Below are positions 29,932-59,104 of a stretch of DNA of 64,000 nt, in pieces (the stretch's first letter is position 1; each line of letters opens with the position of its first letter). Source of the stretch: Mobula hypostoma (Eukaryota); assembly GCF_963921235.1 (NCBI RefSeq), contig NC_086101.1, positions 192,076,001 through 192,140,000 of the forward strand, written 5' to 3'. The notes under the pieces were generated by a model, which was given only the letters and a program-made list of their open reading frames with translations, searched no databases and was not told the DNA's origin. The position numbers and the translations under genes are program-made.

Positions 29932-29992
29932 ATGCTCTCTCTCCGGGTTTGTCTCTGCACGGTCCTGTTGTCCGTCTCAGTCCGGGGATACA
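29932..29992 (+). CDS. Exon 1: signal peptide of an IgSF receptor (MLSLRVCLCTVLLSVSVRGY)
   Basis: ATG with purine at -3, hydrophobic leader, donor A|GTAGGT in phase 1 matching the phase-1 acceptor at 56616. It lies in one of the few non-repetitive islands. Confidence 0.65.
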
Positions 29993-30249
29993 GTAGGTGT
30001 TTTCCATTGTCCGCCTATCTCCTCGTTGTCTCTCTCCTAAAGGCTCGTTTTACTTTCTGGTGAAGCGCGATCGATTTAGACGTTGGTTCTGCCAGTGCAG
30101 GTTTGGTGTTGGGACCCTGTCCTTCCCTGAGTGCTAGGGTGGACTGCCTGCTGGTGACGATGAACCCCAGTACTACTGGGGAGAGACGTCCAAGTCTGAT
30201 GCCCAGTTAAAGGCCGGGCACAATTCCAAGCCTGGGTGGTCTGGAATTT

Positions 30250-30330
30250 GGAGCGAAGCTGTAGCGTGGTGGTTAGCATGATGCTTCACAGTCCCTGTGA
30301 CCCAGGTTCAATTCTCTCCGCTGTCTGTGC
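30250..30330 (+). mobile_element. tRNA-derived SINE head
   Basis: A-box-like TAGCGTGGTGG and B-box-like GGTTCAATTC. Confidence 0.55.
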
Positions 30331-30537
30331 GTTCTTCAGTTCTGAATGCTATTTGCTTATTTTATTGTTTTCACGATCTTTCCCCTCCCTGCATTGGCTG
30401 TTCGACGGTCTTCAGAATCAGAATCAAACTTAATATCACCGGCATATGTCGTGAAACTTGTTAACTTTGTGGCGGCAGTACAATGCAATGCATATTAACA
30501 AAGAAAAACTGAATCACAGTAAGTGTATACGGATATT

Positions 30538-32258
30538 TGTGAGCCTCCGACTCGCTCAGCTCGTGTTCGTCCAGGGGAAGAACCCTCAGCCCGCCAACCT
30601 GGGTAATCGAGTCTGTGTGGATGCTGAGTAATGTACCCCAGTACAGACCCAGAATGCAAACATCAGACAGTACACAATAAGCGATTAAATGATTACACTT
30701 TATAAATCTAACTGTGACTATGTGGTTAGTGGGGAAACAAAATATAAAAGAAAAAGGCGCCACTCTATCAAAGTTAAACAGTTCGTGCACAATCGCTGGA
30801 GCTCAAGGAACAGGGTCTTCTCTCCACCATTCCATCTCCTCCGAACTCCGCGACCCTCGGACTGGGACCAACCACGGTGGTCCACCAGAGTGCTCCCAGC
30901 ACGTCCTTCGTCTTCGCCTCTCCTCCCGAAACGTCCCGCACACTCACTCAGGTTCCCACACATACAGATAGAGTAACATGACTTCCATTGGTTAGTTCCC
31001 CATTATCTCTATAGTTATAACCCAAACATTTCAGCTACAAAGAAACATTACCTCATCAGTTAACATTACAGAGAAACCATTGGTGTGGGTGGAGAATTGG
31101 TTAGCAGACAGGAAGCAAAGAGTGGGAATAAACGGGACCTTTTCAGAATGGCAGGCGGTGACTAGTGGGGTACCGCAAGGCTCAGTGCTGGGACCCCAGT
31201 TGTTTACAATATATATTAATGACTTGGATGAGGGAATTAAATGCAGCATCTCCAAGTTTGCGGATGACACGAAGCTGGGTGGCAGTGTTAGCAGTGAGGA
31301 GGATGCTAAGAGGATGCAGGGTGACTTGGATAGGTTGGGTGAGTGGGCAAACTCATGGCAGATGCAATTTAATGTGGATAAATGTGAAGTTATCCACTTT
31401 GGTGGCAAAAATAGGAAAACAGATTATTATCTGAATGGTGGCCGATTAGGAAAAGGGGAGGTGCAACGAGACCTGGGTGTCATTATACACCAGTCATTGA
31501 AAGTGGGCATGCAGGTACAGCAGGCGGTGAAAAAGGCGAACGGTATGCTGGCATTTATAGCGAGAGGATTCGAGTACAGGAGCAGGGAGGTACTACTGCA
31601 GTTGTACAAGGCCTTGGTGAGACCACACCTGGAGTATTGTGTGCAGTTTTGGTCCCCTAATCTGAGGAAAGACATCTTTGCCATAGAGGGAGTACAAAGA
31701 AGGTTCACCAGATTGATTCCTGGGATGGCAGGTCTTTCATATGAAGAAAGACTGGATGAACTGGGCTTGTACTCGTTGGAATTTAGAAGATTGAGGGGGG
31801 ATCTGATTGAAACGTATAAGATCCTAAAGGGATTGGACAGGCTAGATGCGGGAAGATTGTTCCCGATGTTGGGGAGGTCTAGAACGAGGGGTCACAGTTT
31901 GAGGATAGAGGGGAAGCCTTTTAGGACCGAGGTTAGGAAAAACTTCTTCACACAGAGAGTGGTGAATCTGTGGAATTCTCTGCCACAGCAAACTGTTGAG
32001 GCCAGTTCATTAGCTATGTTTAAAAGGAAGTTAGATATGGCCCTTGTGGCTACAGGGGTCAGGGGGTATGGAGGGAAGGCTGGGTTCTGAGTTGGATGAT
32101 CAGCCATGATCATAATAAATGGCGGTGCAGGCTCGAAGGGCCGAATGGCCTACTCCTGCACCTATTTTCTATGTTTCTATGTTTCTATTTCATTATAACG
32201 CTACAGAGAAGCCATTTTATTTTAGCAGTTAACAGTTAATATTACTGAGAACCCTACA
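30538..32258 (-). repeat. 3' LTR of the second Gypsy (about 610 bp), split by a CR1
   Basis: Begins TGTAGGG directly after the PPT. The distal CA end at 30538 is less certain. Confidence 0.6.
31079..32187 (+). mobile_element. Young CR1 family, 5'-truncated copy with open RT C-terminus
   Basis: ORF 31080-32090 ([17 protein letters not shown]) and (TTCTATGT)n tail. Confidence 0.95.
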
Positions 32259-34081
32259 TTCTCCCCCCACCGAATTTAGTCATGTCCTCATGACGTTCAG
32301 ATAATTTGCCAACTCTTCCTGCAAAAACAGAGCCCGATCCAAGTGCAGAAAGCAGTTACATAGCTCCCCAAAACAGGAGAGATCACATCCTGTTCTCCAG
32401 GTACTACATAGGCCAACCCCTCCGGGGGCGGGGGGGGTGGTGTCCTAATTCGCTGAGACGTCCGTAGTACCCCCTCTTCTAACTCTTCCGGCTCAGCCAC
32501 TACTGGAGACACTTCGGGGCGACCTGGCGAAACCTTCCGTGACCTGTCACTCAAACCCCTCTGCAACTCGGAGCCCCCTGTCCCGGGTTCGGGCCTCCCT
32601 CCCTCTCCTCCAGAGGCCGGCTGCACTCTCTGTTGCCCACCAATAGCCCCCCTCACCTCCCCTGACGCAGTGGGAGAAGGGCCTGGAGTCTCTTCCTCCC
32701 TCACGGGGAAGTTAGCGAACGGCAGCATGTACCACTCATCCGAATCATCGCCTTCCGAATCAGTATCCCTTTCCGGGGCTGGGCAGTCTGTTTTGCGGTG
32801 GGCTCTTCCATCGCCCCGAGGTCGGTCCGGGAGTGACGTTACTCGGTATAAAATTTGGTTCTTCAACTTCAACCGAGGCCATTCCCTCAGTAGTGGAGAC
32901 ACCCAAACGTGTTTCACCTTCTCCGCCCGCGCCATATCCCCCTTTTCCACCGTATAACAAATAGTGCCAATGCCCGGGTCATCTCGCTGAGCAGCTGCCA
33001 CTTCCCCAGGACTTAACTCCGGCAACTGCTTAGTCTTCAGAGCAGTCAGGTCACAGACAACTGAGGGCAGGGTGTCATCAGAAACCCCCAATGGTCCACT
33101 GTGCGATCCGGCCTCTCCTTTTCCTCGGCCTTCACGGTGATAGCAAACGGACACATGGCCTTCACCCCAGGGACAGGAACGCTCTCCCACTCCTCGACCC
33201 TCTCCAGTTCCTCATGCATTCATCGGGACAAAGTGTCTTCATGACTTCAGGCTGAAATCATAAACCGACAATGCCGCCAACCACCGATGGTCTGTAGCAT
33301 CCAGTTTCGCTGAGGTCAGGATGTAAGTGAACGGGTTGTTGTCCGTCCTCACCTCAAACTTGGCCCTGTAGAGGAGGCCGTTCCCATCAATAATAAGTAT
33401 ACAGTTTTGGATACTGTTGGTGGGGACAACGTACCAGGGACAAGTTGTAGTGGTCACATCTCTGGCACCGAGACTGGACCCTCAGCTCAGAAGGGAAGGA
33501 GGAAAAAGAGGAGAGCAGTGGTGATAGGGGATTCAACAGTTAGGGGAACAGATAAGAGGTTCTGTGGGAGAGATCGAGAATCCCGGATGGTCTGTTGCCT
33601 CCCCGGTGCTAGGGTCCACGACATCTCGGATCGAGTTCTCGGTATTCTCAGGAGGGAGGGTGAGCAGCCAGATGTCGTGGTCCATGCAGAGATCAATGAC
33701 ATGGATAGGAAGGAGGAGGAGGTCCTGCAAAGAGAGTTTAGGGAGTTAGGTGCAAAGTTGAAGGACAGGACCTCCAGGGTCGCAATCTCAGGATTGCTAC
33801 CCCTGCCACGTGCTAGTGAGGCTAGAAATAGGAAGATAATGCAGCTAATTACGTGGCTAAGGAGATGGTGCAGGAGGGAGGGCTTCATGTTTCTGGACAA
33901 TTGGGCCTTGTTCCAGGGAAGGTGGGACCTGTTCCGACGGGACGGTTTGCATCTGAACTGGAGGGGGATTAACATCCTTGCGGGAAGGTTTGCTAGTGCT
34001 GCTCCGGGGGGTTTAAACTAGATTTGCAGGGGTAGGGGAACCAGAGTGTTAGAGTAGATAGTGAGGTGGAGGAAGATAAAG

Positions 34082-34344
34082 AACAGTTTCTTTCCAACTC
34101 TGATAAGACTGCTGAACGGATCCTGACCCGGAACTGGGCCGTACCCTCCAAATATCCGGACCTGCCTCTCGTTTTTTTTTACACTACCTGACTTTCCCTT
34201 TTCTATTTTTTATTTATGATTTATAATTTAAATGTTTACTATTTACTATCGATTTGCACTCCAGGGAGAGCGAAGCGCAGAATCAAATATCGCTGTGATA
34301 ATTGTACGCTCTAGTATCAATTGTTCGGCGGCAATAAAGTAAAG
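34082..34344 (+). mobile_element. Short LINE 3' end (Rex1-like) nested in the host CR1
   Basis: NSFFP-type remnant and (TAAAG)n tail. The empty site GATAAAG|GTCATG is seen in the related CR1 at about 209-220. Confidence 0.7.
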
Positions 34345-35237
34345 GTCATGCGAGAACTGCAAGCATAGTGCATGGAGTAAAGCCAGATCTGACATATAAA
34401 GGGGCTTTGAGGAAAGAGAAGCAGAATAAACGGTGTAAAGACAGTAAGGTAGAAGGGCTAAAGTGTGTGTACTTCAATGCAAGAAGCATCAGGAACAAAG
34501 GTGATGAACTGAGAGCTTGGATACGTACATGGAATTATGATGTAGTGGCCATAACGGAGACTTGGCTGGCACCAGGGCAGGGATGGATTCTCAATATTCC
34601 TGGATTTCAGTGCTTTAAGAGGGATAGAGAGGGGGGAAAGCGGCGAAGGGTTGGTATTACTGGTCAGGGATACTATGACAGCTACAGAAAGAGTGGGTAA
34701 TGAAGCAGGATCCTCTTTTGAGTCAGTATGGGTGGAAGTCAGGAACAGGAAGGGAACAGTTACTCTATTGGGAGCATTCTATAGGCCCCCTGGTAGCAGC
34801 AGAGATACTGAGGAACAGATTGGGAGGCAGATTTTGGAGAAGTGCAAAAACAACAGGGTTTTTATCAAGGGTGACTTTAACTTCCCTAATATTGATTGGC
34901 ACCTGATTAGTTACAATGGTTTAGACGGGGCAGAGTTTGTTAAGTGTGTCCAGGACGGATTCCTGTCACAGTATGTTGACAGGTGGATTGGGGGGAATGC
35001 CATACTAGATCTAGTATTAGGTAATAAATGGGGTCAGGTCACAGATCTTTCAGTGGGAGAGCATCTGGGGGACAGTGACCACCGCTCCCTAGCCTTTAGC
35101 ATTATCATGGAAAAGGATAGAATCAGAAAGGACAGGAAAATTTTTAATTGGGGAAGGGCAAATTATGAGGCTATAAGGCTAGAACTTGTGGGTGTGAATT
35201 GGGATATTGTTATTGCAGGGAAATGTACTAAGGACAT

Positions 35238-36565
35238 AGATAGAAACATAGAAAATAGGTGCAGGAGTAGGCCATTCGGCCCTTCGAGCCTGCACCGCCA
35301 TTTATTATGATCATGGCTGATCATCCAACTCAGAACCCAGCCTTCCCTCCATACCCCGTGACCCCTGTAGCCACAAGGGCCATATCTAACTTCCTTTTAA
35401 ACATAGCTAATGAACTGGCCTCAACAGTTTGCTGTGGCAGAGAATTCCACAGATTCACCACTCTCTGTGTGAAGAAGTTTTTCCTAACCTCGGTCCTAAA
35501 AGGCTTCCCCTCTATCCTCAAACTGTGACCCCTCGTTCTAGACCTCCCCAACATCGGGAACAATCTTCCCGCATCTAGCCTGTCCAATCCCTTTAGGATC
35601 TTATACGTTTCAATCAGATCCCCCCTCAATCTTCTAAATTCCAACGAGTACAAGCCCAGTTCATCCAGTCTTTCTTCATATGAAAGACCTGCCATCCCAG
35701 GAATCAATCTGGTGAACCTTCTTTGTACTCCCTCTATGGCAAGGATGTCTTTCCTCAGATTAGGGGACCAAAACTGCACACAATACTCCAGGTGTGGTCT
35801 CACCAAGGCCTTGTACAACTGCAGTAGTACCTCCCTGCTCCTGTACTCAAATCCTCTCGCTATAAATGCCAGCATACCGTTCGCCTTTTTCACCGCCTGC
35901 TGTACCTGCATGCCCACTTTCAATGACTGGTGTATAATGACACCCAGGTCTCGTTGCACCTCCCCTTTTCCTAATCGGCCACCATTCAGATAATAATCTG
36001 TTTTCCTATTTTTGCCACCAAAGTGGATAACTTCACATTTATCCACATTAAATTGCATCTGCCATGAGTTTGCCCACTCACCCAACCTATCCAAGTCACC
36101 CTGCATCCTCTTAGCATCCTCCTCACTGCTAACACTGCCACCCAGCTTCGTGTCATCCGCAAACTTGGAGATGCTGCATTTAATTCCCTCATCCAAGTCA
36201 TTAATATATATTGTAAACAACTGGGGTCCCAGCACTGAGCCTTGCGGTACCCCACTAGTCACCGCCTGCCATTCTGAAAAGGTCCCGTTTATTCCCACTC
36301 TTTGCTTCCTGTCTGCTAACCAATTCTCCACCCACACCAATACCTTACCCCCAATACCATGTGCTTTAAGTTTGCACACTAATCTCCTGTGTGGGACCTT
36401 GTCAAAAGCCTTTTGAAAATCCAAATATACCACATCCACTGGTTCTCCCCTATCCACTCTACTAGTTACATCCTCAAAAAATTCTATGAGATTCGTCAGA
36501 CATGACATTCTATGAGATGACATTCTATGAGATGACATTCTCATGAAATTCTATGAGATTCGTCA
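35238..36565 (-). mobile_element. Young CR1 family copy with a stuttered 5' junction
   Basis: ORF 35330-36544. TSD GACAT at 35233-35237 and 36566-36570. Confidence 0.95.
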
Positions 36566-36883
36566 GACATGTGGTCGATGTTTAGGGATCTCTCGCAGGA
36601 TGTTAGGGATAAACTTATCCCGGTGAGGAAGATGAAGAATGGGAGGGTGAAGGAACCATGGGTGACAAGTGAGGTGGAAGATCTAGTCAGGTGCAAGAAG
36701 GCAGCATACATGAGGTTTAGGAAGCAAGGATCAGATGGGTCTATTGAGGAATATAGGGTAGCAAGAAAGGAGCTTAAGAAGGGGCTGAGGAGAGTGAGAA
36801 GGGGGCATGAGAAGGCCTTGGTGAGTAGGGTAAAGGAAAACCCCAAGGCGTTCTTCAATTATGCGAAGAAAAAAAGGATGACA

Positions 36884-39275
36884 TAGAAACATAGAAACAT
36901 AGAAAATAGGTGCAGGAGTAGGCCATTCGGCCCTTCGAGCCTGCACCACCATTTATTATGATCATGGCTGATCATCCAACTCAGAACCCCGCCCCAGCCT
37001 TCCCTCCATACCTCCTGACCCCTGTAGCCACAAGGGCCATATCTAACTCCCTCTTAAACATAGCCAATGAACTGGCCTCAACAGTTTCCTGTGGCAGAGA
37101 ATTCCACAGATTCACCACTCTCTGTGTGAAGAAGTTTTTCCTAATCTCGGTCCTAAAAGGCTTCCCCTCTATCCTCAAACTGTGACTACTCATTCTGGAC
37201 TTCCCCAACATCGGGAACAATCTTCCTGCATCTAGCCTGTCCAATCCCTTTAGGATCTTATACGTTTCAATCAGATCCCCCCTCAATCTTCTAAATTCCA
37301 ACGAGTACAAGCCCAGTTCATCCAGTCTTTCTTCATATGAAAGTCCTGCCATCCCAGGAATCAATCTGGTGAACCTTCTTTGTACTCCCTCTATGGCAAA
37401 GATGTCTTTCCTCAGATTAGGGGACCAAAACTGCACACAATACTCCAGGTGTGGTCTCACCAAGGCCTTGTACAACTGCAGTAGTACCTCCCAGCTCCTG
37501 TACTCAAATCCTCTCGCTATAAATGCCAGCATACCATTCGCCTTTTTCACTGCCTGCTGTACCTGCATGCCCACTTTCAATGACTGGTGTATAATGACAC
37601 CCAGGTCTCGTTGCACCTCCCCTTTTCCTAATCAGCCACCATTCAGATAATAATCTGTTTTCCTATTTTTGCCACCAAAGTGGATAACTTCACATTTATC
37701 CACATTAAATTGCATCTGCCATGAGTTTGCCCACACACCCAACCTATCCAAGTCACCCTGCATCCTCTTAGCATCCTCCTCACTGCTAACACTGCCACCC
37801 AGCTTCGTGTCATCCGCAAACTTGGAGATGCTGCATTTAATTCCCTCATCCAAGTCATTAATATATATTGTAAACAACTGGGGTCCCAGCACTGAGCCTT
37901 GCGGTACCCCACTAGTCACCGCCTGCCATTCTGAAAAGGTCCCGTTTATTCCCACTCTTTGCTTCCTGTCTGCTAACCAATTCTCCACCCACACCAATAC
38001 CTTACCCCCAATATCGTGTGCTTTAAGTTTGCACACTAATCTCCTGTGTGGGACCTTGTCAAAAGCCTTTTGAAAATCCAAATATACCACATCCACTGGT
38101 TCTCCCCTATCCACTCTACTAGTTACATCCTCAAAAAATTCTATGAGATTCGTCAGACATGATTTTCCTTTCACAAATCCATGCTGACTTTGTCCGATCA
38201 TTTCACCGCTTTCCAAATGTGCTGTTATCACATCCTTGATAACTGACTCCAGCAGTTTCCCCACCACCGACGTTAGGCTAACCAGTCTATAATTCCCCGG
38301 TTTCTCTCTCCCTCCTTTTTTAAAAAGTGGGGTTACATTAGCCACCCTCCAATCCTCAGGAACTAGTCCAGAATCTAACGAGTTTTGAAAAATTATCACT
38401 AATGCATCCACTATTTCTTGGGCTACTTCCCTAAGCACTCTGGGATGCAGACCATCTGGCCCTGGGGATTTATCTGCCTTCAATCCCTTCAATTTACCTA
38501 ACACCACTTCCCTACTAACATGTATTTCACTCAGTTCCTCCATCTCACTGGACCCTCTGTCCCTTACTATTTCTGGAAGATTATTTATGTCCTCCTTAGT
38601 GAAGACAGAACCAAAGTAATTATTCAATTGGTCTGCCATGTCCTTGCTCCCCATAATCAATTCACCTGTTTCTGTCTGCAGGGGACCTACATTTGTCTTT
38701 ACCAGTCTTTTCCTTTTTACATATCTATAAAAGCTTTTACAGTCCGTTTTTATGTTCCCCGCCAGTTTTCTCTCATAATCTTTTTTCCCCTTCCTAATTA
38801 AGCCCTTTGTCCTCCTCTGCTGAACTCTGAATTTCTCCCAGTCCTCAGGTGAGCCACTTTCTCTGGCTAATTTGTATGCTACTTCTTTGGAATTGATACT
38901 ATCCCTAATTTCTCTTGTCAGCCACGGGTGCACTACCTTCCTTGATTTATTCTTTTGCCAAACTGGGATGAACAATTGTTGTAGTTCATCCATGCAACCT
39001 TTAAATGCTTGCCATTGCATATCCACCGTCAATCCTTTAAGTGTCATTTGCCAGTCTATCTTAGCTAATTCACGTCTCATACCTTCAAAGTTACCCCTCT
39101 TTAAGTTCAGAACCTTCGTTTCTGAATTAACTATGTCACTCTCCATATTAATGAAGAATTCCACCATATTATGGTCACTCTTACCCAAGGGGCCTCTCAC
39201 GACAAGATCGCTAATTAACCCTTCCTCATTGCTCAAAACCCAGTCCAGAATAGCCTGCTCTCTAGTTGGTTCCTC
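36884..39275 (-). mobile_element. Young CR1 family copy, 2.4 kb, RT nearly intact
   Basis: ORFs 37632-39476 and 36981-37616 are separated by a CGA>TGA stop relative to sister copies. TSD GACA at 36880-36883 and 39276-39279. Confidence 0.95.
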
Positions 39276-39340
39276 GACAGGAGTGAAGGTTGGACCGATT
39301 AGAGATAAAGGTGGGAAGATGTGCCTGGAGGCTGTGGAAG

Positions 39341-47229: not shown

Positions 47230-49725
47230 ATGTAAATAAATCCAGTTTCTCAAGTCCTGGTAACATCTTTGTAAACCTTCTCTGCACTCTTTCAAACTTA
47301 TTAATATCCTTCCTGTAATTTGGTGATCAAAACTGTACAGAATACTACAAATTTGGCCTCACTAATGCCTTATTCAGGGGGGAATGTCGACTCCGACCAT
47401 GTGTTGGGCATGTGTTGTGTTAGGCACGTGGCCAAGTGGTTAAGGCGTTCGTCTAGTGATTTGAAGGTCAATAGTTTGAGCCTCGGCTGTGGCAACGTGC
47501 TTGTGTCCTTGAGCAAGGCACTTCATCACACATTGCTCTAGTCTGGGCAAGGAGTGGCACCCCACACAGACTTCCAATCTGTGCCTTGTAAGGCGCCAAA
47601 ATGCCCAATGCAGACCTCTCATTGTCTGAGTCGACGTTCCCTTATTCAACCTCACCATAACATTCCAACTCTTATACTCAATACTTTGATTTTAAAGACC
47701 CATGTACCAAAAGCTCTCTTTATGACCCTATCTACATATTTACAATCAACGCCACTTTTAGGGAATTTTGTATCTGTATTCCCAGATCTCTCTGTTCTAC
47801 TGCACTCCTCAGTGCCTTACCATTTACCCTGTACGTTCTACCTTGGTCTGTCCTTCCAAAGTGCAATACCTCACACTTGTCTGTATTAAACTCCATCTGC
47901 CATCTTTCAACCCATTTTTCCAGCTGGCCCAAATCCCTCTGCAAGCTTTGAAAACCTTCCTCACTGTCCACTACATCTCCAAACTTTATGAACAAATTCA
48001 TCAACAAATTTGCTGATCCAATTTACCACATTATCATCCAGATCATTGATAAAGATGACAAATAACAATGGACCCAGCACTGATCCCTGTGGCACACCAC
48101 TAGTCACAGGCCTCCACTCTGAGAAGCAATCCTCTACTACCACTCTTTGGCTTCTTCCATTGAGCCAATGTCTAATCCAATTTACCACCTCCCCTTGTAC
48201 ACCTAGCGACTGAATCTTCCTAACTAACCTCCCATGCGGGACCTTGTCAAAGGCCTTACTGAAGTCTATGTAGACAATATCCACTGCCTTCCCTTCATCC
48301 ACTTTCCTGGTAACCTCCTCAAAAAACTCCAATAGATTGGTCAAACATGACCTACCACGCACAAAGCCATGTTGACTCTCCCTAATAAGTCCCTGTCTAT
48401 CCAAATACTTGTAGATCCTATCCCTTAGTACTCCTTCCAACAATTTACCTACTACTGATGTCAAATTTACTGGTCTATAATTTCCCGGATTATTTTTAGA
48501 GCCTTTTTTAAATAACGGAACAACATGAGCTATCCTCCAATCCTCCGGCACCTCACCCGTAGATACCGATATTTTAAATATATCTGCCAGAGCCCCTGCA
48601 ATTTCAACACTAGTCTCCTTCAAGGTCTGAGGGAAGACCCTGTCAGGTCCTAGGGATTTATCTACTCTGATTTGCCTCAAGATAGCAAGCACCTCCTCCT
48701 CCTCCTCCTCCTCAATCTGTACAGGTTCCATGACCTGACTACTTGTTTGCCTTATTTCCATTGACTCCATGCCAATTTCCTTCATAAATACAGATGCAAA
48801 AAACCCATTTAAGATCTCCCCCATTTCTTTTGGTTCCATACATAGCCAACCACTCTGATCTTCAAGAGGACCAATTTTATCCCTTACTATCCTTTTGCTC
48901 TTAATACACCTTAGCTCTTTGGATTATCTTTCACCTTGACTGCCAAAGCAAACTCATGTCTTCTTTTAGCCCTCCTGATTTCTTTCTTAAGTTTTTTTTT
49001 GCACTTTTTATACTCCTCAAGCACCTTATTTGCTCCCTGTTTCCTATACATGTTATACATCTCTCTCTTCTTCTTTATCAGAGTTCCAATATCCTTTGAG
49101 AACAAAGGTTCCTTATTCTTATTCAATTTGCATTTAATCCTGACAGGAACATACAAACTCTGCACCCTCAAAATTTCTCCTTTGAAGGCCTCCCACTTAC
49201 CAATCACATCCTTGCCAGAGAACAACCTGACCCAATCCACGCTTTTTAGATCCGTTCTCATTTCTGCAAATTTGGCCTTTTTCCAGTTTAGAACCTCAAC
49301 CGCAGAACCAGATCTATCTTTATCCATGATCAAGTTGAAACTAATGGTGTTATGATCACTGGAACCAAAGTGTTCCTGTACACACACTTCCGTCACCTGT
49401 CCTAACTCGTTTCCTAACAGGAGATCTAATATTACATCCTCTCTAGTTGGTTCCTCTATATATTGATTGAGAAAACTTTCCTGAACACATTTTACAAACT
49501 CTAAGCCGTCTAGACCTTTAACGGTATGGGAATCCCAATCCATATGTGGAATAATTAAAATCCCCTACTATCACAACTTTATGTTTCCTGCAGTTGTCTG
49601 CAATCTCTCTGTAGGTTTGCTCCTTCAATTCTCGCTGAGTATTGGGTGGTCTATAATACAACCCCATTAATGTGGTCATTCCATTCCTGTTTCTCAGCTC
49701 CACCCATATCGCCTCATTAGACAAG
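47230..49725 (-). mobile_element. CR1 ORF2 fragment (endonuclease to RT)
   Basis: ORFs 47961-48839 and 48911-49543 carry CR1 motifs. Confidence 0.92.
47377..47640 (+). mobile_element. tRNA-derived SINE bracketed by inverted ends and an 8-bp TSD
   Basis: A box TGGCCAAGTGG and B-box-like GTTTGAGCC. GGAATGTCGACTC (47381-47393) vs GAGTCGACGTTCC (47628-47640). CTTATTCA at 47369-47376 and 47641-47648. Confidence 0.75.
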
Positions 49726-49729
49726 CCCC

Positions 49730-51165
49730 ATATCCACTCTATCTCGGCCTATCAATATTCGAACTGACTATAGGAACAATCCTCTCCATATCCACTCTAT
49801 CTTGGACTATCAATATTCGAATTGATTATAGGAGAGATGCCGTCCAAAGTCACTCTATCTAGGCCTATCAATATTCAAACCGATTATAGGAACAATCCTC
49901 TCCATGCAACACACATCAAAGTTGCTGGTGAACGCAGCAGGCCAGGCAGCATCTCTAGGAAGAGGTACAGTCGACGCTTCGGGCCGAGACCCTTGGTCAG
50001 GACTAACTGAAGGAAGAGCTAGTAAGAGATTTGAAAGTGGGAGGGAGAGGGGGAGATCCAAAATGATAGGAGAAGACAGGAGGGGGAGGGATGGAGCCAA
50101 GAGCTGGACAGGTGATTGGCAAAAGGGATATGAGAGGATCATGGGACAGGAGGCCCAGGAAGAAGGAAAAGGGGGAGGGGGGGAAAACCCAGAGGATGGG
50201 CAAGGGGTATAGTCAGAGGGACAGAGGGAGAAAAAGGAGAGAGAGAGAAAGAATGTGTGTATATAAATAAATAACGGATGGGGTACAAGGGGGAGGTGGG
50301 GCATTAGCAGAAGTTTGAGAAGTCAATGTTCATGCCATCAGGTTGGAGGCTACCCAGATGGAATATAAGGTGTTGTTCCTCCAACCTGAGTGTGGCTTCG
50401 TCTTTACAGTAGAGGAGGCCATGGATAGACATATCAGAATGGAAATGGGACGTGGAATTAAAATGTGTAGCCACTGGGAGCTCCTGCTTTCTCTGGCGGA
50501 CAGAGCGTAGGTGTTCAGCGAAATGATCTCCCAGTCTGCGTCGGGTCTCGCCAATATATAGAAGGCCACATCGGGACCACCGAACGCAGTATATCACCCC
50601 AGCCGACTCACAGGTGAAGTGTTGCCTCACCTGGAAGGACTGTCTGCGGCCCTGAATAGTGGTGAGGGAGGAAGTGTGAGGGCATGTGTAGCACTTGTTC
50701 CACTTACAAGGATAAGTGCCAGGAGGGAGTTCGGTGGGGAGGGATGGGGGGGACGAATGGACAAGGGAGTCGCGTAGGGAGCGATCCCTGCAGAAAGCAG
50801 AGAGTGGGGGGGGAGGGAAAGATGTGCTTAGTGGTGAGATCCCGTTGGAGGTGGCGGAAGTTATGGAGAATAATATGTTGGACCCGGAGGCTGCTGGGGT
50901 GGTAAATGAGGACAAGGGGAACCCTATTCCTAGTTGGGTGGCAAGAGGATAGAGTGAGAGCAGATGTGCATGAAACGGGGAGATGCGTTTGAGAGCAGAG
51001 TTGATCGTGGAGGAAGGGAAGCCCCTTTCTTTAAAAAAGGAGGACATCTCCCTCATCCTGGAATGAAAAGCCTCATCCTGAGATATCTAGGCCTATCAAT
51101 ATTCGAACTGACTATAGGAAAGGTCCTCTCCATGTCCACTCTATCTAGGCCTATCAATATTCGAC
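49730..51165. repeat. 58-bp tandem repeat array (about 5 units) interrupted by Penelope
   Basis: Unit starts at 49730, 49788, 49846 and 49904, resumes at about 51084, and another unit starts at about 51131. Confidence 0.88.
49907..51082 (-). mobile_element. Penelope-like element 3' part: RT C-terminus, GIY-YIG endonuclease, terminal repeat with mutated hammerhead
   Basis: ORF 50304-51056 contains GVIYCVRWSRCGLLYIGETRRRLGDHFAEHL. Terminus CTGACCAA-GGGTCTCGGCCC-GAAGCGTC at about 49967-50005. Confidence 0.92.
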
Positions 51166-52934
51166 ACATTGCAATGAGATCCCCTCTCAATGACTATAAT
51201 CCCTTGATCCTTATTCTCGAGGTCTTTTCCCCTCCTCCACCCATGCAAAAGTCAGGAAGTTTTGTTACAGCTTTATAAAACTCTGGTGAGGCCACATCGG
51301 GAGTATTGTGTACAGTTCTAGTCACCTCACTACAGGAAGGATGTCGAGGCTCTGGAGAGGATGCAGAAGAGGTTCAGCAGGACGCTGCCTGGATTAGAGG
51401 GCGTGTGCTATAACGATAGGGTGGATAAACTTGGGTTGTGTGGTAATGTGAGCATTATTACAAGTAAGTTAATACTAATCAGGATAATGGGGGGGGGTTT
51501 ACTTCTGGTGGGCTTTGTATATAGTGTGCCTGCCATGCCGTACGGGTTGTGAAAGCCTCCATATATACATAACAGTTTTGAAGTTTGAGATAAAGTTGTT
51601 TCTTTGGCATGGAATTGTCGAGTGTGCCTTTGGGAATGTGGGAGGAAACCAGAGCACCCGGGAGAACTCTATGTGGTCACAGAGAGAATGTGGAAACAGA
51701 TCCTGAGGTCAGGATGGAACTTGGCATCTCTGGAGCTGTGAGCCATCAGCCCTACCCACTGCGCCATTGTGCTGCAGTGGAGGCCATGGTGGCGTAATGG
51801 AATAAATGGCCAGGATTCAAGAGACAGGCACTTGCTGCTCTTTTTTCAAAATAAATGTTGAGACTTTTGAGAGGGTGCAGAAGAGATTCACCAGGACGCT
51901 GCCTGGAATAGTGGGCGTGTGCTATAACGAGAGGGTGGATAAACACGGGTTGTTTTCTCTGGAGCGACGGAGGCTGAGGGGAGATCTGACACAGTTTGTA
52001 AGATTATGAGAGGCAGAGATAGAGTAGACAGTCAGTATCTTCCTCCCAGGGTTGAAATGTCTGACACCAAAGGCCTGCATTGAGGATGAAAGGGGACGCG
52101 AGGGCTAAATGTTTTACACCCAGAGTGCCAGGTGCCTGGAACACTCTGCCTGGGGAGGTGTTACAGACAGATACATCAGAGATTTTTAACAGACATTTAG
52201 ATCGGCTCATGGATGTGAGGAAAATGGAAGGGAATGGACATTGTGCAGGCAGAGGGGATTAGTTTAGTTGGTCATTGGATTACTAATTTCATTGGTTCAG
52301 CACAACATTGTGGGCCGAAGCGCCTGTTCCTGTGCTGGACTGTTCTGTGTTCTATGTTCTCGTGTTAAATACAGTAAATCTATGATCATCTGCTGTTGAG
52401 AAATCCTGGTTGTTCCCTATCCGGCTCACCAGGTGCCTGTGGCTCACGGCGTCACTCTGTTTCCCATTTCCAGGGAATAAAAATGACCTTCTGACATCAC
52501 GATCTACCACCACAGGAGAAACACACAGAATGCTGCAGGATCTGAGCAGGTCAGGCAGCGTCTATGGAGGGGAATAAACAGTCAATGTTTTGACCTGACA
52601 CCCTTCACCAGGACTGGAAAGGAAGGGGAAAGATGCCAGAATATGGTGGTGGGGGAGTGGGACTGACTGGGCTGTTCTTACACAGGGCCAGTATGAACTC
52701 AATGGGCTGAATGGCCTCCTGAATGCTGCAACTGTTCCGTCACTCCGAGGTAATTCCAAGAGCTCTCCTCCGTAACCGGTGCCCCCGATTCTCCAATCAC
52801 TTCCCTTCCTGAAAATGAAATGGCAGGATTGTAAAAGCCATCAGACCCAGGGAACAGATGACAATGACAAACCCCCGAAACCCTGACTCGACCCCAGCCT
52901 GTAACACAGTATGGTTCATTCAGAGTCTGAGGTG

Positions 52935-53450
52935 AACAGGTTTGTCACCAAAGACACTGGCAAATTTCGATAGATATACCTGGAGAGCATTCTGGTCTGG
53001 AGGGACCACTGCTCAGGATCAGAGAGAGCAGCAGAAAGTTGTAAACTCAGTCAGCTCCATCACGAGCACTAGTGTCCCCAACATCCAGGACACCTTCAAA
53101 ATGCAATGCCTCAAAAAGGCGGCATCCATCATTACGGACCCCCAGCACCCAGGACCTGCCCTCTTCTCATTGCTACCATCAGGGAGGAGGTACAGGAGCC
53201 CGAAGGCACACACTCAATGTTTCAGGAACAGCTTCTTCCCCTCTGCCATCAGATTTCTGAATGGTCAATGAATCCATGAGCACTTCCCCAGTACTTTTTC
53301 CACTCTTTTACCACAACTTATTTATTTACTTTCCTTATTTTATATGCACTTACTGTAATTTACAGATTTTATTATTATACATTGCCTTGTACTGCTGCTG
53401 CAAAATAACAAATTTCATGACATACGCCAGTAATGTAATCTTGTTGTCTA
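52935..53450 (+). mobile_element. Rex1/Babar-type 3' fragment
   Basis: IITDPQHPGPALFSLLPSGRRYRS...FRNSFFPSAIR. Confidence 0.8.
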
Positions 53451-54539
53451 TTCCATTGTTTTAGAAACACAGAAACATAGAAAACTAACAGCACAATACA
53501 GGCCCTTCAGCCCTCAAAGCTGTGCTGTATATGTCCTTACCTGAGCAATTATGGGTAACCATAACCCTCCATTTTTCTAAGCTCCATGTACCTATCCAAA
53601 AGTCTCTTAAACGACTCTATAATATCTGCCTCCACCACTGTCATTGGCAGCCCATTCCATGCACTCACCGCTCTCTGCGTAAAAAAACTTACCCCTGACA
53701 TCTCCTCTGTACCTACTTTCAAGCACCTTAAAACTATGTCCTCTTGTGCTAGCCATGTCAGCCCTGGAAAAAGGCTCTGACTATCCTTAACGACCCTCAC
53801 CCAGGGGCACTTACATCTACTGCCATGAAATGCCGTGAGAGGTCGCTCTCGGCTGGAATCCACTCCTGCCTCAGGAGGAACCTGGGCCCATGGCAATTTG
53901 CCTGTCACCACAACAGGTCTACAGCAGATGTAATCTCACTGGCTTCTCATGTGGCCTTGGGTCACCTGGACAACAGCAAAACCATTGCACTGCTTATTTC
54001 ATTCAGTTATTTATCGATATTTATTGTAAATAATCCTTTTTATTTTTGCGCTTTACACTGTACAGCTGCGGCAAAACAACAGATTTCACGACAGATGCCG
54101 GTGATATTAAACCTGATTCCGATTCCCCTCATCCCAGTTGCACCCCTCCCACGTCAGAGCCCAGCCTGTTACCCACTCCCCTGGTTTAATGGTCAAGTCA
54201 GGCCCACTGACATCTGAAGATTCACTCATGATGACACCGCACAGTAGTGAAACTCCATGTCTGTTCCCCAGATTTTTCACCCACTTTCCCCACCTTCCCC
54301 ACTCTTGACCCGGTTCCACCTGCCAGACGCATCTCCCCAACGGGTCCCATTCTCATCTCACATTATCAGGCTCCAGGACTGGGACCTGAGTGACCCTCCC
54401 TCAAGCAACTGATTACAATCATTTCTCTCCATCTGAATCTCCTTTCCTTCCCTCTTCTCCATCCATCACCACTGACCACATCTCCCATCTCCCTTCCCCC
54501 TTCCATACCCAACACAACCTGCCCTTAACCTTGTATCCC

Positions 54540-56290
54540 ACCTCAATCCATCAATCACCTCAGAGTCCGGTCTCACCCTTCTCAATCCATCAATCACCTC
54601 AGAGTCCGGTCTCACCCTCCTCAATCCATCAATCACCTCAGAGTCCTGTTCCACCCCTCCTCAATCCATCAGTCACCTCAGACTCCTGCCTTATTCCTCC
54701 TCAATCCTTCAATCACTTCAGACTCCTGTCTAAACCCTCCACAATCCATCAATCACCTCAGACACGTCTCACCCCTCCACAGTCCATCAATCACCTCAGA
54801 CATGTCTCACCCCTCCACAATCCGTCAATCACCTCAGATACTTCTCACCCATCCTCAGACCAACAATCACTTCAGACTCCAGTGTCCCCACTTGGCAAAT
54901 TATCAATCACTTCAAAATCCTGTTTTACCCCTCCTTAACCCATCAATCACTTCAGACTCCTGTCCATCAATCCATCAGTCACCTCGGAGTCAACTTTCAC
55001 CCTCCTCAATTCATCAATCACTTCAGACTCCTGTCCATCAATCCATCAGTCACCTTGGAGTCAACTTTCACCCTCCTCAATTCATCAATCACCTCAGACT
55101 CCTGCCTCACCTATCCTTGGTGCTTCAATTATTTTAGACTCCTGTCTCACACCACTTCAATCTGCCCTCGGTTACCACGACGACTCACCAGCTGTTCGTT
55201 GCTCTCTCTCTCTTTAAGTCAGTCGCACTCTCTCTCTCTCTCTCTCTCTTTAAAGGTACAGTTCATACGGGATAATTCAGGATCCCTTCACACCATCAAT
55301 CACCTCAGACAGTTGTCTCACCCCTCCTCAGTCACTGAATCACCTCAGACCCCACTCTCACACTCCTCATTCCATCTAGAACCACAGACTCGTGTCTCAG
55401 CCCTCCACAATCCATCAATCACATCAGACTCATCTCACTCCTCCTCAAACCATCAATCACCTCAGACTCATGTCTCAACCCTCCTCAATCCACCAATCAA
55501 CACAAACTTTGTCTCACACTCCCTCAATCTATCAATCACCTTGCACTCCTGTCTCACCCCTCCTCAATCCATAAATCCCCTCAGAAGCCCGTCTAATCCC
55601 TTCTCAATCCATCAATCATCTCAGACTCCTGTCTCACCTGTCCTCAATTCATCAATCAGCTGAGACTCCTGTCTCAACTGTCCTTAATCCATCAATCTCC
55701 TGAGACTCCTTTGTCACTCGGAAATCCATCAATCACCTCAGACCCCTGTCTCAACCCTCCTCTATCCATCAATCAAATCAGAATCCTGACTCTCCCCTCC
55801 TCAATGCATCAATCACTGAGATTCATTTCTCACCCTTTCTCAATCCATCAATCAGAGACTCCTGTCTCGCCCCCACCTCAATTCATCAATCACCTCAGAC
55901 AATTCAGACTGCATTTCATTCCATCAATCACCTCAGACTCATTTCAACAATCCCCTATCCATCAGTCACCTTAGATTCCTGTCTCACACCTCTTCAATCC
56001 ATCAAAAACTTTAGACCACTGCCTCATCCGTCCTCAATCCTCATACTCCTGTCTCATTCCTCTTCATTCATCAGTTACCTAACACTCCTATCTCACTCCT
56101 CCTCAACCCATCAATCTCCTTAGACTCCTGTCGCGTCTCTCCTCAATCCTTCAGTCAACTGAGACCACTGCCTCACCCCTCCGCTATCAATAAATCACCT
56201 CTGACTCCTGTCTCACCACTCCTTAATTATCAATCACCTCAGACTCCTGTCTCACCCCTCCTCAATCAGACAATCCCCTCAGACTGCTGT
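54540..56290. repeat. Degenerate 39-bp minisatellite, unit approx. CAATCCATCAATCACCTCAGACTCCTGTCTCACCCTCCT
   Basis: Period 39 (54544 vs 54583), roughly 40 or more degenerate units, strongly G-poor on +. Confidence 0.9.
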
Positions 56291-56399
56291 CTCTCCCCTT
56301 TCCTTTCACTCTGGCCATTCAACAGTCCTATATCAGTCCCGATGCAAGCCCAAAACTTCAGTGTTCTTTTACCCTCACAGATGTTCAAATATCGACCTC

Positions 56400-56615
56400 T
56401 GTCTACCCGTCCTCCCACTCACACACTCTCTCTCTCTCACTCAATCCCTGTCTCACTCACTCCCAGTATCTCTCTCTCTGTCACTCTCATTCTCTCACTC
56501 TCACTCACTCACTCACACACTCTCTCTCTCTCTCTCCCCCTCTCTCCCCCTCTCTCGCACTCACTCACTCAATCCCTGTCTCACTCACTCCCAGTATCTC
56601 TCTCTCTCTCTCCAG
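56400..56615 (+). repeat. (TC)n/(TCAC)n microsatellite forming the polypyrimidine tract of exon 2
   Basis: Pyrimidine-rich run ending TCTCTCCAG at 56615. Confidence 0.85.
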
Positions 56616-56999
56616 ACTTTTCGTTCAATAGTTGGTCAATGTCCGGCGCTGATGTTGCCTCTGCGGTGGAAGGAGCCTCCGCTGTGTTACCGTGTACTTT
56701 CACCCACCCACCCAAAAACCTCGTCCCTTCCGGCTCCGTGATCTGGTACAGGGAGAAACCAGGTGCTAACAAACCGGTATTTCGCTGCTCATATCCCGGT
56801 TCCGGCCGCTCCGTGTGCGATACAACAACACTGAAGACTGGAGGAGGGCGGTTCGGATTCGTGGGGAACCTCAGTCGGAGAGATGCCTCGATAATGGTGC
56901 AGCGTCTGAACCGGAGTGACCGTGGTCGGTATTGGTGCCGGGTGGAGCTCAATATTGATAAATTTCAAACGGAGCTTCTAACAAATCTGTCTGTGAGAG
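56616..56999 (+). CDS. SIGLEC15-like: Exon 2: Siglec-15-like V-set Ig domain
   Basis: 384 nt, phase 1-1, CAG| acceptor and G|GTGAGG donor, no stops. WSM..A.EG..AVLPCTFTHP, IWY, VFRC...C extra Cys pair, GRF.FVGN..R.DASI.V.RL...D.GRYWCRVE with the conserved Arg. Confidence 0.9.
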
Positions 57000-58343
57000 G
57001 TGAGGACGATGTTCAAACATTGAGTTGTAAAACCACACCATTCATTTCACATTTTATCTCCCTGAAAACATATTTTATTCATAATTTACAAGTACATTTT
57101 GCAGGAGAATCATGTCAAATTGCACGTGATTGTCATGTGCACATCACATAGAACACTACAGTACTGTACAGGCCCTTCGGCCCACAATGTTGTGCTGACC
57201 CTTAAACCTGCTCCAAGATCAATCTAACCCTTGCCTCCCACATACCCTCCATTTCTACAACATCCATGTACCTGTCTGAGAGTCCACCCTCCCCGTCTCT
57301 CCCCTCCCCCTCCTCCCCTCCTCTCCCTCCCACATACCCCTCCGTTTCCACAACCTCTCCCCTTCTCCGCTCTCTCTCCCCTCTCCCCCTCTTCTCCCTC
57401 TCTCCCTCTCTCCCTCTCCCTCCTATTTCAAAACTATACCCCTTTGTGTTAGCCATTTCAGCCTTGGGGAAAAAGCCTCTGATTATCCACACGATCAATG
57501 CCTCTTATCATCTTATACACCTCCATTAGATCACCTCTCATTCTCTGTCACTCAAACGAAAAAAGGCTGAGTTCACTCAACCAAATCTGATAAGGCATGC
57601 TCCCCAATCCAGGCAACATCCTGGTAAATCTGCTCTATACTCTCTCCATAATATCCACATCCTTCCTGTAATGAGGTGACCAGAAATGAACACAGTACTC
57701 TGACGGGGTGTCTGACCAAGGTCTTTTTTAGCTGTAACATGACCTCACAGCTCTTGAACCCAATTCCACGTTGATGAAGACCAACACGCCATACGCCTTC
57801 TCAACAACATTGTCAAGCTGCATAGCTGCTTTGAGTGTCCGATGGACTCAGACCCCAAGATCCCTCTGATCCTCCACACTGCCAAGTCTTACCATTAATA
57901 TTGTATTCTGTCTTCACACTGACCTACCAAAGTGAATCACTTCACACTTATCTGGGTTAAAGTCCATCTGCCACTTCTCAGCCCAGTTCTGCATCCTCTC
58001 GATGTCCCTCAGTAACCTTTGACAGCCCTCCAGACTATCCACAACACCCCCAACCTTTGTGTCTTCAGCACAAACCCACCCTTCTACTTCCTCCTCCGGG
58101 TCATTTATAAAAATCACATCAGAAAAGCTGCAATCAAGTTCAAGTTTATTGTCATCTGACTGTACACATATACAGAGCCAAACGAAACCACCTTCTTCCA
58201 GATCAATGTGCACTCACAAAACATATGTCGTACACAGCTCATAAAACACTGTATAACCAAAAAATAACTAATAAAGTATAATTCATGTAGTTTGCAGCAC
58301 AGGTAAACAGTAAACAGCTCGCTGTCCTATCTTTGTATAACAC

Positions 58344-58454
58344 AGGGTTCACTGTAGAATTCCTTCTCAAACACACCAGCTCAGGCTGTTGAACACTTTC
58401 AGTACAATAAGTATTGAGCTGGTGTGTTTGAGAATGAATTCTACAGTGAACCCT
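58344..58454. other. Near-perfect hairpin: 40-bp arms (1 mismatch), 31-nt spacer
   Basis: 58344-58383 is the reverse complement of 58415-58454 except one position. Confidence 0.9.
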
Positions 58455-58714
58455 CTCCAGTGTAAATACTTACTGTACTGAACGTGGTGGTGTGAGATTT
58501 AGGCTTCTCTACCTCCTGCCCGATGGGACTGTTTTATGTTCGAAAGAGTTTCTTTTGTTTGAATGGGTTGCAATTAGTAAGACATGTGGGGGTGTTTTTA
58601 TCCAGGAGGATGCCGTGGGGAGTTTTTATTATTTTGTAGACTGGAAATTTTGTCAGTGTTAAACATGTTTGGTGGTGGTTAACTGATTTATTCTGGCACC
58701 TGTCCTTCCCTCAG

Positions 58715-59104
58715 CTCCCGGCGAGAGTGTCTCTGTGATGACTGGAACCGAGGGAGCTTCGGCCACGTTACCCTGTGAGTTCACACGGCCTCCGCAGAGC
58801 CTCACCGCACACACGGTGACGTGGAGGAGGAAGGATCCCTACCGACACATCGTCACATTCAGGCGTTATGAAAATGGATCGTGGGCAGCGGAAAACGGAG
58901 TGACTCGGTACGAGCTCGTCCGGGACCCAGAGTGGGGAAACGTCTCGATCAGGATAAAGCGGCTGAGTGTGGAGGACAGTCACAGCTACCTGTGTCTGGC
59001 TGCGTTCAGGAAAAAGAGCCATGATTATTCGTCCAACAGAGGCCAAGTCACACCCCCATTTATCCATGTGTTCCAGAGTGAGATCCAGCTGCAGGTCAGA
59101 CCAG
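58715..59104 (+). CDS. Exon 3: second V-set Ig domain
   Basis: 390 nt, phase 1-1, CCCTCAG| acceptor and CAG|GTCAGA donor (weaker). B-strand Cys LPCEF, C-strand Trp VTWRR, RYELV.DP..GNVSIRI.RL..EDS.SYLC. Confidence 0.82.

What the first reader, a model, noticed from the sequence alone, without database searches (positions are those of the whole stretch)
29932..59104. Siglec-15-like receptor gene with two tandem V-set domains, hidden in a retroelement field
Three phase-1-compatible exons assemble into leader-V1-V2. V1 has the Siglec-15 hallmarks: LPCTFTHP, the extra FRC...C cysteine pair, and YWCRVE with the sialic-acid-binding Arg (R143 in human Siglec-15). Siglec-15 itself is V-C2, whereas here V1 is followed by another V domain. 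That suggests a lineage-specific Siglec-15-related receptor family with a different architecture, not the ortholog. The leader/V1 junction creates an N-F-S sequon. Both V exons are stop-free amid decayed repeats, implying selection. Linking the leader across 26.6 kb is inference.
Basis: partly seen in the sequence, partly recalled or inferred. Interest (0 to 1): 0.8.

Follow-up and report, generated by a model that had tools for sequence, protein, structure and literature searches.

The report
Inhibitory Siglec-15-like ray receptor gene
The three exons are real and begin a roughly 112-kb devil-ray gene for a cell-surface immune receptor whose tip resembles the sugar-binding domain of Siglec-15 but which carries a second V-type domain and an inhibitory tail. 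It belongs to an expanded shark-and-ray family of paired activating and inhibitory receptors that I found described in no paper I could search.

Summary
Observation confirmed. Leader (29932-29992), V1 (56616-56999) and V2 (58715-59104) have AG/GT borders and phase 1, and they join in frame.

- **V1 identity.** Its best solved relative by sequence and by predicted fold is human Siglec-15. It keeps both disulfide pairs, the Trp and the sialic-acid Arg.
- **V2 identity.** V2 is a true V-set domain, not C2.
- **Gene extent.** The gene runs far past the window. Downstream lie three more V2 exons (one cut short at its 5' end), an uncharged transmembrane exon and eight tail exons ending in the ITIM VIYAAV. 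All are intact and in phase, giving 318, 448 or 708 aa depending on V2 use.
- **Annotation.** NCBI models only the 3' part (LOC134347359, Mobula hypostoma). No retrieved model holds the leader, V1 or V2a.
- **Leader link.** Two sister genes each have a 98-99% identical leader 22-23 kb upstream of their V1. NCBI's model of one joins leader, V1 and V2.
- **Family.** At least nine V1 exons lie within 1.6 Mb. One subcluster has a Siglec-15-like transmembrane lysine; the other, including this gene, has ITIM tails. The family occurs across sharks and rays.
- **Weak point.** In four probable RNA runs only paralogs were seen, not this copy.

Earlier notes of this scan had flagged two of the downstream V2 exons separately.

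The parts
29932..29992 (+). Exon 1: start codon and signal peptide (20 codons plus 1 nt), donor GT at 29993
   Evidence: The peptide is 100% identical to the leaders of Hemitrygon akajei family proteins P0003, P0004, P0176 and P0180. It is the only such leader in the window. Two 98-99% identical copies lie 22.6 and 23 kb upstream of the sister V1 exons, and one of them is used in NCBI model P0182.
29993..56615 (+). Intron 1, 26.6 kb, filled with LINE fragments; a 40-bp satellite array (54537-56297) lies just upstream of V1
   Evidence: RVT_1 and endonuclease domains in ORFs on both strands. Tandem array. tblastn found no other V or leader exon in this stretch.
56616..56999 (+). Exon 2: V1, a Siglec-15-type V-set domain with the W, C, C, C, C and R hallmarks
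   Evidence: Pfam V-set 2.7e-13. Best solved relative by sequence is human Siglec-15 7ZOZ, E 2e-19, against 4e-7 for CD33. AlphaFold model pLDDT 84; best fold match 7ZOZ_A, TM 0.81. All named non-elasmobranch relatives are Siglec-15. In the tree it is sister to bony-vertebrate Siglec-15 V domains.
57000..58714 (+). Intron 2, 1.7 kb
   Evidence: The same V1-to-V2 spacing of 2-5 kb is seen in the eight or more paralog pairs.
58715..59104 (+). Exon 3: V2a, a second V-set domain without the sialic-acid Arg (CLA instead of CRV); first of four tandem V2 exons
   Evidence: Pfam V-set 4e-14. Fold matches are nectin-1, CRIg and CAR V domains, none of them C2. D2 domains form their own clade at 99/96. 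Copies lie at extended coordinates 73998-74387, about 86104-86447 (5'-truncated) and 93365-93754.
59105..64000 (+). Start of intron 3; the gene continues beyond the window end
   Evidence: tblastn found no transmembrane or tail exon here. Read-through of the donor would add about 51 codons, as in NCBI model P0182 of the sister gene. Downstream exons lie in L001-L008: transmembrane 105199-105285, tail exons to the stop at 141789 in extended window coordinates, which is G000:C12:192217789.

Best explanation
The three exons are the 5' end of one large gene. It spans about 112 kb, G000:C12:192105932-192217789, probably in Mobula hypostoma. It encodes a type-I membrane receptor with this order of parts: signal peptide; a Siglec-15-type lectin V domain (V1); one to three membrane-proximal V-set domains (V2a, V2b, V2d, made by tandem exon duplication, all phase 1-1 and so freely combinable); an uncharged transmembrane helix; and a cytoplasmic tail with repeated CTYASI-type motifs and a terminal canonical ITIM (VIYAAV).

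Inferred mechanism: V1 binds a sialylated ligand through the conserved Arg, Trp and aromatic site. The phosphorylated ITIM then recruits SH2 phosphatases and dampens leukocyte activation. The gene is the inhibitory half of a paired-receptor system. Its activating partners, 1.1-1.5 Mb away, share the leader-V1-V2 module but carry a Siglec-15-like transmembrane lysine and a short tail.

Shown here: exon structure, domain identities, the family and its two tail types.

Inferred: splicing of this particular copy, the ligand and the signalling.
For: - **Exons and phases:**. All 14 exons have AG/GT borders. The single stop is at the end. Products are 318, 448 or 708 aa.
- **V1 is Siglec-15-like:**. 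W44, C64, C95, C104, C142 and R143 are conserved, and Y154 is replaced by Phe (residue roles).
- **V2 is V-set:**
- **Tail exons:** the transmembrane and tail exons are the only ones downstream, and the only leader upstream is at 29932.
- **NCBI model of the 3' part:** P0229 (LOC134347359) joins V2c, V2d, the transmembrane exon and the tail at 100% identity.
- **Sister gene:** its NCBI model P0182 joins a leader 23 kb upstream to V1 and V2.
- **Relatives:** Mobula birostris P0185 and P0175, Leucoraja P0010, Narcine P0005 and Mustelus P0007 join V1, V2, the transmembrane helix and the ITIM tail in one protein.
- **Two subclusters:** Lys-transmembrane exons occur only at 190.68-191.05 Mb and ITIM-tail exons only at 191.93-192.30 Mb.
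- **Shared module:** homology between this gene and the one activating gene compared (at 190.68 Mb) ends about 40 bp after the V2 donor.
- **Concerted evolution:** activating and inhibitory D1 domains cluster by species, for example the Heterodontus pair at 100/99.
- **No excess decay:** end-branch lengths of this copy are like those of its modelled paralogs.
Against: - **No transcript of this copy was seen.** In four probable RNA runs, depth was limited to the exons. Every contig differed from the window at the V2a-private sites 58826, 58933 and 58961 and at V1 sites 56716/56717. No 56999>58715 joint appeared among the 15 joints listed (174 more were not shown).
- **No protein model found for the 5' part.** Two searches retrieved no model holding leader, V1 or V2a.
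- **The sister gene's model stops early.** It ends by reading through the V2 donor instead of splicing to its transmembrane exon.
- **Weak constraint since duplication.** V2 copies evolve at about the neutral rate. V1 dN/dS is 2.6-2.9, but this rests on 2-3 synonymous changes (p 0.05-0.15).
- **Private changes at conserved sites.** V1 has V14A, and V2a has Met to Arg after the invariant Trp.
- **Binding site incomplete.** Siglec-15 ligand contact Y87 is Gly here.
- **Non-canonical motifs.** One tail exon has lost its Tyr (CTSASI), and the CTYASI motifs have Cys at position -2, so they are not canonical ITIMs.
Confidence: 0.65

Rival explanations
1. The window copy is a young duplicate that is silent, decaying or truncated. 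Either leader-V1-V2a is not transcribed, or its transcript reads through the V2a donor and gives a short secreted V1-V2 protein. In that case the downstream V2c-V2d-transmembrane-tail exons form a separate unit, as annotated (LOC134347359).
For: - Only paralog sequences appear in the four probable RNA runs. One contig runs through a V2 donor into the intron.
- NCBI starts LOC134347359 inside V2c and has no model for the 5' exons.
- The sister gene's model P0182 ends by read-through.
- Evolution of the V2 copies looks neutral, and there are private changes at conserved sites.
Against: - All 14 exons and their splice sites are intact.
- LOC134347359 begins at an internal Met of a 5'-truncated V exon with no signal peptide, so it looks like an incomplete model, not a gene start.
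- No other leader lies between 29932 and the transmembrane exon.
- Branch lengths of this copy equal those of the modelled paralogs.
- Four small runs from one study are a thin sample of tissues.
Confidence: 0.27
2. It is simply the ray ortholog of Siglec-15, an activating DAP12-coupled V-C2 receptor, poorly assembled or misread.
For: - V1 is closest to Siglec-15.
- Activating paralogs carry a PLG-L/I-K transmembrane motif like bird Siglec-15.
Against: - The second domain is V-set in every member.
- The only transmembrane exon downstream of this gene has no charged residue and is followed by an ITIM tail.
- There are nine or more V1 copies.
- The window has no N and the exons are clean.
Confidence: 0.03
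3. The receptor is real but V1 no longer binds sialic acid. On this reading the family uses the Siglec-15 scaffold for a protein or pathogen ligand, as happens in Arg-mutated CD33-related Siglecs.
For: - Y87 is lost, and the F-G loop is shorter than in tetrapod Siglec-15.
- dN/dS in V1 is nominally high.
- Some family members have replaced the Arg: P0188 has K, P0008 has S, P0011 has H.
- PMC7226832 reports that zebrafish Siglec-15 bound the tested glycans only weakly.
Against: - Arg, Trp and an aromatic at the Y154 position are kept in this copy and in most members from sharks to rays.
- The short DKF-type F-G loop is shared with paddlefish and carp Siglec-15, so it is not a derived loss.
Confidence: 0.2

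Closest known systems
Siglec-15 (human, PDB 7ZOZ; orthologs in mammals, birds, frogs, sturgeon, teleosts)
   Same: The N-terminal V domain is 39-45% identical. LPCTFTHP, the B-F disulfide C64-C142, the unusual C95-C104 pair, W44 and the essential R143 are all kept. It is the best match by sequence (E 2e-19) and by predicted fold (TM 0.81). Activating paralogs keep a similar Lys-bearing transmembrane helix.
   Different: The second domain is V-set, not C2. This gene has an uncharged transmembrane helix and a long ITIM tail instead of a Lys for DAP12. The locus is multi-copy rather than single-copy, V2 is amplified within the gene, and Y87 is not conserved.
Primate paired CD33-related Siglecs (Siglec-5/14, Siglec-11/16)
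   Same: Inhibitory ITIM genes and activating charged-transmembrane genes share a nearly identical ectodomain module kept similar within a species. The tail motifs have a YASI/YASL core plus a distal ITIM, recalling the LHYASL and TEYSEV motifs of CD33-related Siglecs (the motifs and the existence of these pairs are from my own knowledge).
   Different: This is a different Siglec lineage, Siglec-15-like, with the canonical B-F disulfide. The ectodomain is V-V rather than V-C2n. It is an elasmobranch family, not a mammalian one. Conversion tracts were not mapped here.
NCBI automatic gene models of the same family (for example M. hypostoma LOC134347359, LOC134346388, 'Siglec-15' XP_062903800-2; M. 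birostris, Hemitrygon akajei, Hypanus sabinus, Leucoraja, Narcine, Heterodontus, Rhincodon)
   Same: They share the same exon types. LOC134347359 is the 3' part of this very gene at 100% identity. LOC134346388 is the sister gene's leader-V1-V2.
   Different: None retrieved contains this window's leader, V1 or V2a. Their names are inconsistent (uncharacterized, CD33-like, sialoadhesin-like, JAM-like, pIgR-like, HAVCR1-like, Siglec-12, Siglec-15). I found no paper describing the family.

Membership tests
Siglec-15 (orthologous group) | N-terminal V-set domain most similar to Siglec-15 V | tested here: met
   PDB phmmer gives 7ZOZ at E 2e-19 and the next hit, CD33, at 4e-7. Foldseek's top hit is 7ZOZ_A, TM 0.81. 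All named non-elasmobranch hits are Siglec-15. The tree shows a sister relation.
Siglec-15 (orthologous group) | Essential Arg on strand F (human R143) and the C64-C142 plus C95-C104 cysteines | tested here: met
   Alignments; residue roles from PMC10264397. W44 is also kept, Y154 is Phe and Y87 is Gly.
Siglec-15 (orthologous group) | A single C2-set second domain | tested here: not met
   V2 is Pfam V-set at 4e-14 over profile positions 5-106 of 109. Its fold matches only V domains. Tetrapod Siglec-15 proteins score Ig_3/I-set at that position.
Siglec-15 (orthologous group) | Lysine in the transmembrane helix for DAP12/DAP10 | tested here: not met
   The transmembrane exon at extended coordinates 105199-105285 has no charged residue in the helix. 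Lys-transmembrane exons occur only in the 190.68-191.05 Mb paralogs.
Siglecs (sialic-acid-binding Ig-type lectins) | Demonstrated sialic-acid binding that depends on the Arg | not testable with these tools
   Only conservation of the site is shown.
ITIM-bearing inhibitory immunoreceptors | Cytoplasmic [S/I/V/L]xYxx[I/V/L] motif behind an uncharged transmembrane helix | tested here: met
   VIYAAV lies in the last exon. The same terminal motif occurs in ray, skate and shark relatives P0004, P0010, P0007 and P0012. The extra CTYASI and PLYDNI motifs are non-canonical.
ITIM-bearing inhibitory immunoreceptors | Recruitment of SHP-1/SHP-2 after tyrosine phosphorylation | not testable with these tools
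   Inference from the motif only.
Paired activating/inhibitory receptor families | Linked genes with similar ectodomains but opposite transmembrane and tail types | tested here: met
   V1 is 87% and V2 92% identical to activating P0183. Homology with the one activating gene compared ends about 40 bp after the V2 donor. The two tail types sit in two subclusters. Domains group by species, not by type.
Expressed, spliced gene (this copy) | Reads joining 29992>56616, 56999>58715 and V2 to the transmembrane exon | tested here: inconclusive
   Four probable RNA runs, held as contigs only, show paralog sequences and no such joint among the 15 listed (174 more not shown). The leader and the transmembrane exon lay outside the 6-kb stretch that could be laid.

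The most novel reading that the evidence does not exclude
Sharks and rays turned the otherwise single-copy, purely activating Siglec-15 into a multigene paired-receptor system. A sialic-acid-binding V1 is mounted on one to several V-set stalk domains and coupled either to a DAP12-type lysine or to ITIM tails. On this reading the window gene would be a functional inhibitory counterpart of Siglec-15, whose ectodomain length is tuned by tandem V2 exon duplication and alternative splicing.
Probability: 0.45. Interest if true: 0.65.

Novelty: new variant of a known kind. Interest (0 to 1): 0.52.

Why it matters
In the papers read here, Siglec-15 is grouped with the highly conserved Siglecs and described as an activating, DAP12-coupled receptor (PMC7226832; PMC10264397). 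It is also a drug target in bone disease and cancer.

An old vertebrate lineage holds ten or so Siglec-15-derived genes, with both lysine-transmembrane and ITIM members and a V-V ectodomain. This would show that the Siglec-15 lectin domain can serve inhibitory signalling. It would also show that the paired-receptor logic seen in primate CD33-related Siglecs arose independently in cartilaginous fish. It gives natural variants of the Siglec-15 binding site for structure-function work. Finally, it shows that current automatic annotation splits and mislabels these genes.

Tried and rejected
- **Tail exons inside the window.** I searched the window and the next 40 kb for transmembrane and tail exons with relatives' tails. 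Nothing was found except a chance match at 59673-59714. The real exons lie 41-78 kb past the window end.
- **RNA evidence.** The first run search was dominated by repeats. The second, with V1 alone, found DNA runs and 'RNA?' runs. Laying four of them showed family expression but not this copy, and many repeat-derived false joints.
- **A candidate true Siglec-15 ortholog.** I looked at a V-C2 gene at 190.45-190.47 Mb, which is frog Siglec-15's best hit. It lacks the C95-C104 pair and the transmembrane Lys and sits on a long branch, so orthology stays open.
- **Positive selection on V1.** dN/dS is 2.6-2.9, but it is not significant and synonymous divergence is far below intron divergence. I make no claim.
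- **Literature.** Searches for Siglec with shark, cartilaginous fish, elasmobranch and similar terms found no description of the family.
Full report
**The observation**

The leader runs from the ATG at 29932 to 29992 and is followed by GT. V1 (56616-56999) and V2 (58715-59104) each follow a polypyrimidine tract and AG, and each is followed by GT. Lengths of 61, 384 and 390 nt put every junction in phase 1. The joined frame is open, and the split codon gives N-F-S. The window contains no N. Both V exons are Pfam V-set, at 2.7e-13 and 4e-14. The surrounding sequence is indeed a field of LINE reverse-transcriptase and endonuclease fragments.

**What V1 and V2 are**

- V1's best solved relative is human Siglec-15 (7ZOZ) at E 2e-19. 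CD33 follows at 4e-7.
- The alignment keeps W44, C64, C95, C104, C142 and R143. The Siglec-15 structure paper describes these as the two disulfides, one of them unique to Siglec-15, and the sialic-acid salt-bridge arginine.
- In a 35-sequence alignment the Y154 position is Phe and Y87 is Gly. The short DKF-type F-G loop is shared with paddlefish and carp Siglec-15.
- An AlphaFold model of V1 (pLDDT 84) matches 7ZOZ_A best, at TM 0.81, followed by sialoadhesin and Siglec-7.
- Every named non-elasmobranch relative of V1 among 1.8 billion representatives is a Siglec-15.
- V2 lacks the Arg (CLA). By sequence it resembles CD276 and the Siglec-15 V domain. By fold it matches only V domains such as nectin-1, CRIg and CAR.
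- Tetrapod Siglec-15 proteins score as V plus a C2-like domain (Pfam Ig_3/I-set), while the shark and ray proteins score as V plus V.

**The rest of the gene**

The window is G000:C12:192076001-192140000. The contig length of 199,023,498 equals that recorded for Mobula hypostoma proteins, so that species is the likely source.

- Downstream DNA (L001-L008) holds three further V2 exons: 73998-74387, a 5'-truncated copy at about 86104-86447, and 93365-93754, in window coordinates continued past 64000.
- These exons were created by tandem duplication of a block of about 3.5 kb that is 93-94% identical between copies.
- Next come an uncharged transmembrane exon (105199-105285) and eight small tail exons. 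The last encodes EVIYAAVVKKQ and the stop at 141789.
- All have AG/GT borders and compatible phases. Because the V2 exons are symmetric, products of 318, 448 or 708 aa are all in frame.
- NCBI's LOC134347359 (P0229) matches V2c, V2d, the transmembrane exon and the tail at 100%. It starts at an internal Met of the truncated V2c and has no signal peptide, so it is an incomplete model of this gene.
- Two database searches retrieved no protein with this leader, V1 or V2a.

**The leader link**

The leader and its flanks occur three times at 98-99% identity. Each copy lies 22.6-26.6 kb upstream of a V1 on the same strand. The sister gene's leader differs by one residue, and that variant is the one present in NCBI model P0182. 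That model joins leader, V1 and V2 of the sister gene. No other leader or V exon lies in intron 1.

**The family**

- At least nine V1 exons lie between 190.68 and 192.28 Mb, each followed by V2 exons.
- Members have one of two ends. One is a transmembrane helix with a lysine in a PLGLK motif like bird Siglec-15, followed by a short tail. The other is an uncharged helix with the ITIM tail.
- Lys-transmembrane exons are confined to 190.68-191.05 Mb. ITIM-tail exons are confined to 191.93-192.30 Mb, where this gene lies.
- Homology between this gene and the one activating gene compared (at 190.68 Mb) covers V1 and V2 and stops about 40 bp after the V2 donor.
- The family is found in rays, skates and sharks.
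- In a domain tree, D2 domains form one clade (99/96). D1 domains are sister to bony-vertebrate Siglec-15 V domains. Activating and inhibitory members group by species, which suggests concerted evolution of the shared ectodomain.
- A V-V-C2-transmembrane(K) relative (P0031) and a V-C2 gene at 190.45-190.47 Mb also lie on this chromosome. Which of these, if any, is the strict Siglec-15 ortholog remains open.

**Weak points**

- Four probable RNA runs, held only as contigs, show exon-limited depth over V1 and V2. Every contig differs from the window at sites private to this copy. No V1-to-V2 joint appeared among the 15 joints listed (174 more were not shown), and one contig runs through a V2 donor.
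- Since duplication, the V2 copies have diverged at about the rate of their flanks, with dN/dS near 1.
- V1 paralogs are more alike (about 95%) than their introns (81-93%). Their dN/dS of 2.6-2.9 rests on very few synonymous changes.
- This copy has a few private changes at conserved positions. Its branch lengths, however, match those of the modelled paralogs.

**Verdict**

This is the unannotated 5' half of an inhibitory, ITIM-bearing, Siglec-15-like V-V receptor gene within a paired-receptor cluster specific to cartilaginous fish.

Automatic models of the family exist under inconsistent names. I found no paper on it. Whether this particular copy is expressed, what it binds and how it signals are all inferences.

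Noticed in passing
window 54537-56297: A 40-bp satellite array of about 45 copies at 67% match lies directly upstream of the V1 exon. CT- and CACT-rich simple repeats follow it, up to the acceptor.
   Followed up: partly
window 62840-63877 (+): A 346-aa ORF with a GDSL-lipase/esterase domain. Such esterase ORFs are, from my own knowledge, typical of CR1/L2-type LINE ORF1. It sits in intron 3 among RVT_1 and endonuclease ORFs.
   Followed up: partly
L001-L003 (extended coordinates 73759-77319, 86104-87400, 93125-94253): Tandem duplication of the V2 exon with up to 3.5 kb of flank, 93-94% identical. One copy (V2c) lost its first 46 nt and its acceptor to an insertion, yet NCBI's model starts inside it.
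   Followed up: partly
L007 (extended coordinates 125190-125243 / 128133-128186 and 130975-131052 / 131802-131879): Cytoplasmic exons are duplicated in pairs. One copy of the CTYASI exon has Tyr replaced by Ser (CTSASI), and NCBI's model skips it.
   Followed up: partly
P0003 (Hemitrygon akajei, 'CD33-like'): After 20 residues of V2, this model continues in a shifted reading frame of the V2 exon. The cause is either a frameshift in that species' gene or an annotation error.
   Followed up: no
G000:C12:190454409-190471993 (-), L015/L016: A V-C2-transmembrane gene that is frog Siglec-15's best hit in this genome. It has the YFCRVE Arg but lacks the C95-C104 cysteine pair and the transmembrane lysine.
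   Followed up: partly
G000:C12:192042288-192042371 (+): An isolated CTYASI-type tail exon about 34 kb upstream of the window, with no V exon nearby in my searches. It may be a remnant of another family member.
   Followed up: no
P0002 (Narcine bancroftii): A model with the pattern leader-V1-V2-V1-V2. This suggests that whole V1-V2 modules are also duplicated within genes in other rays.
   Followed up: no
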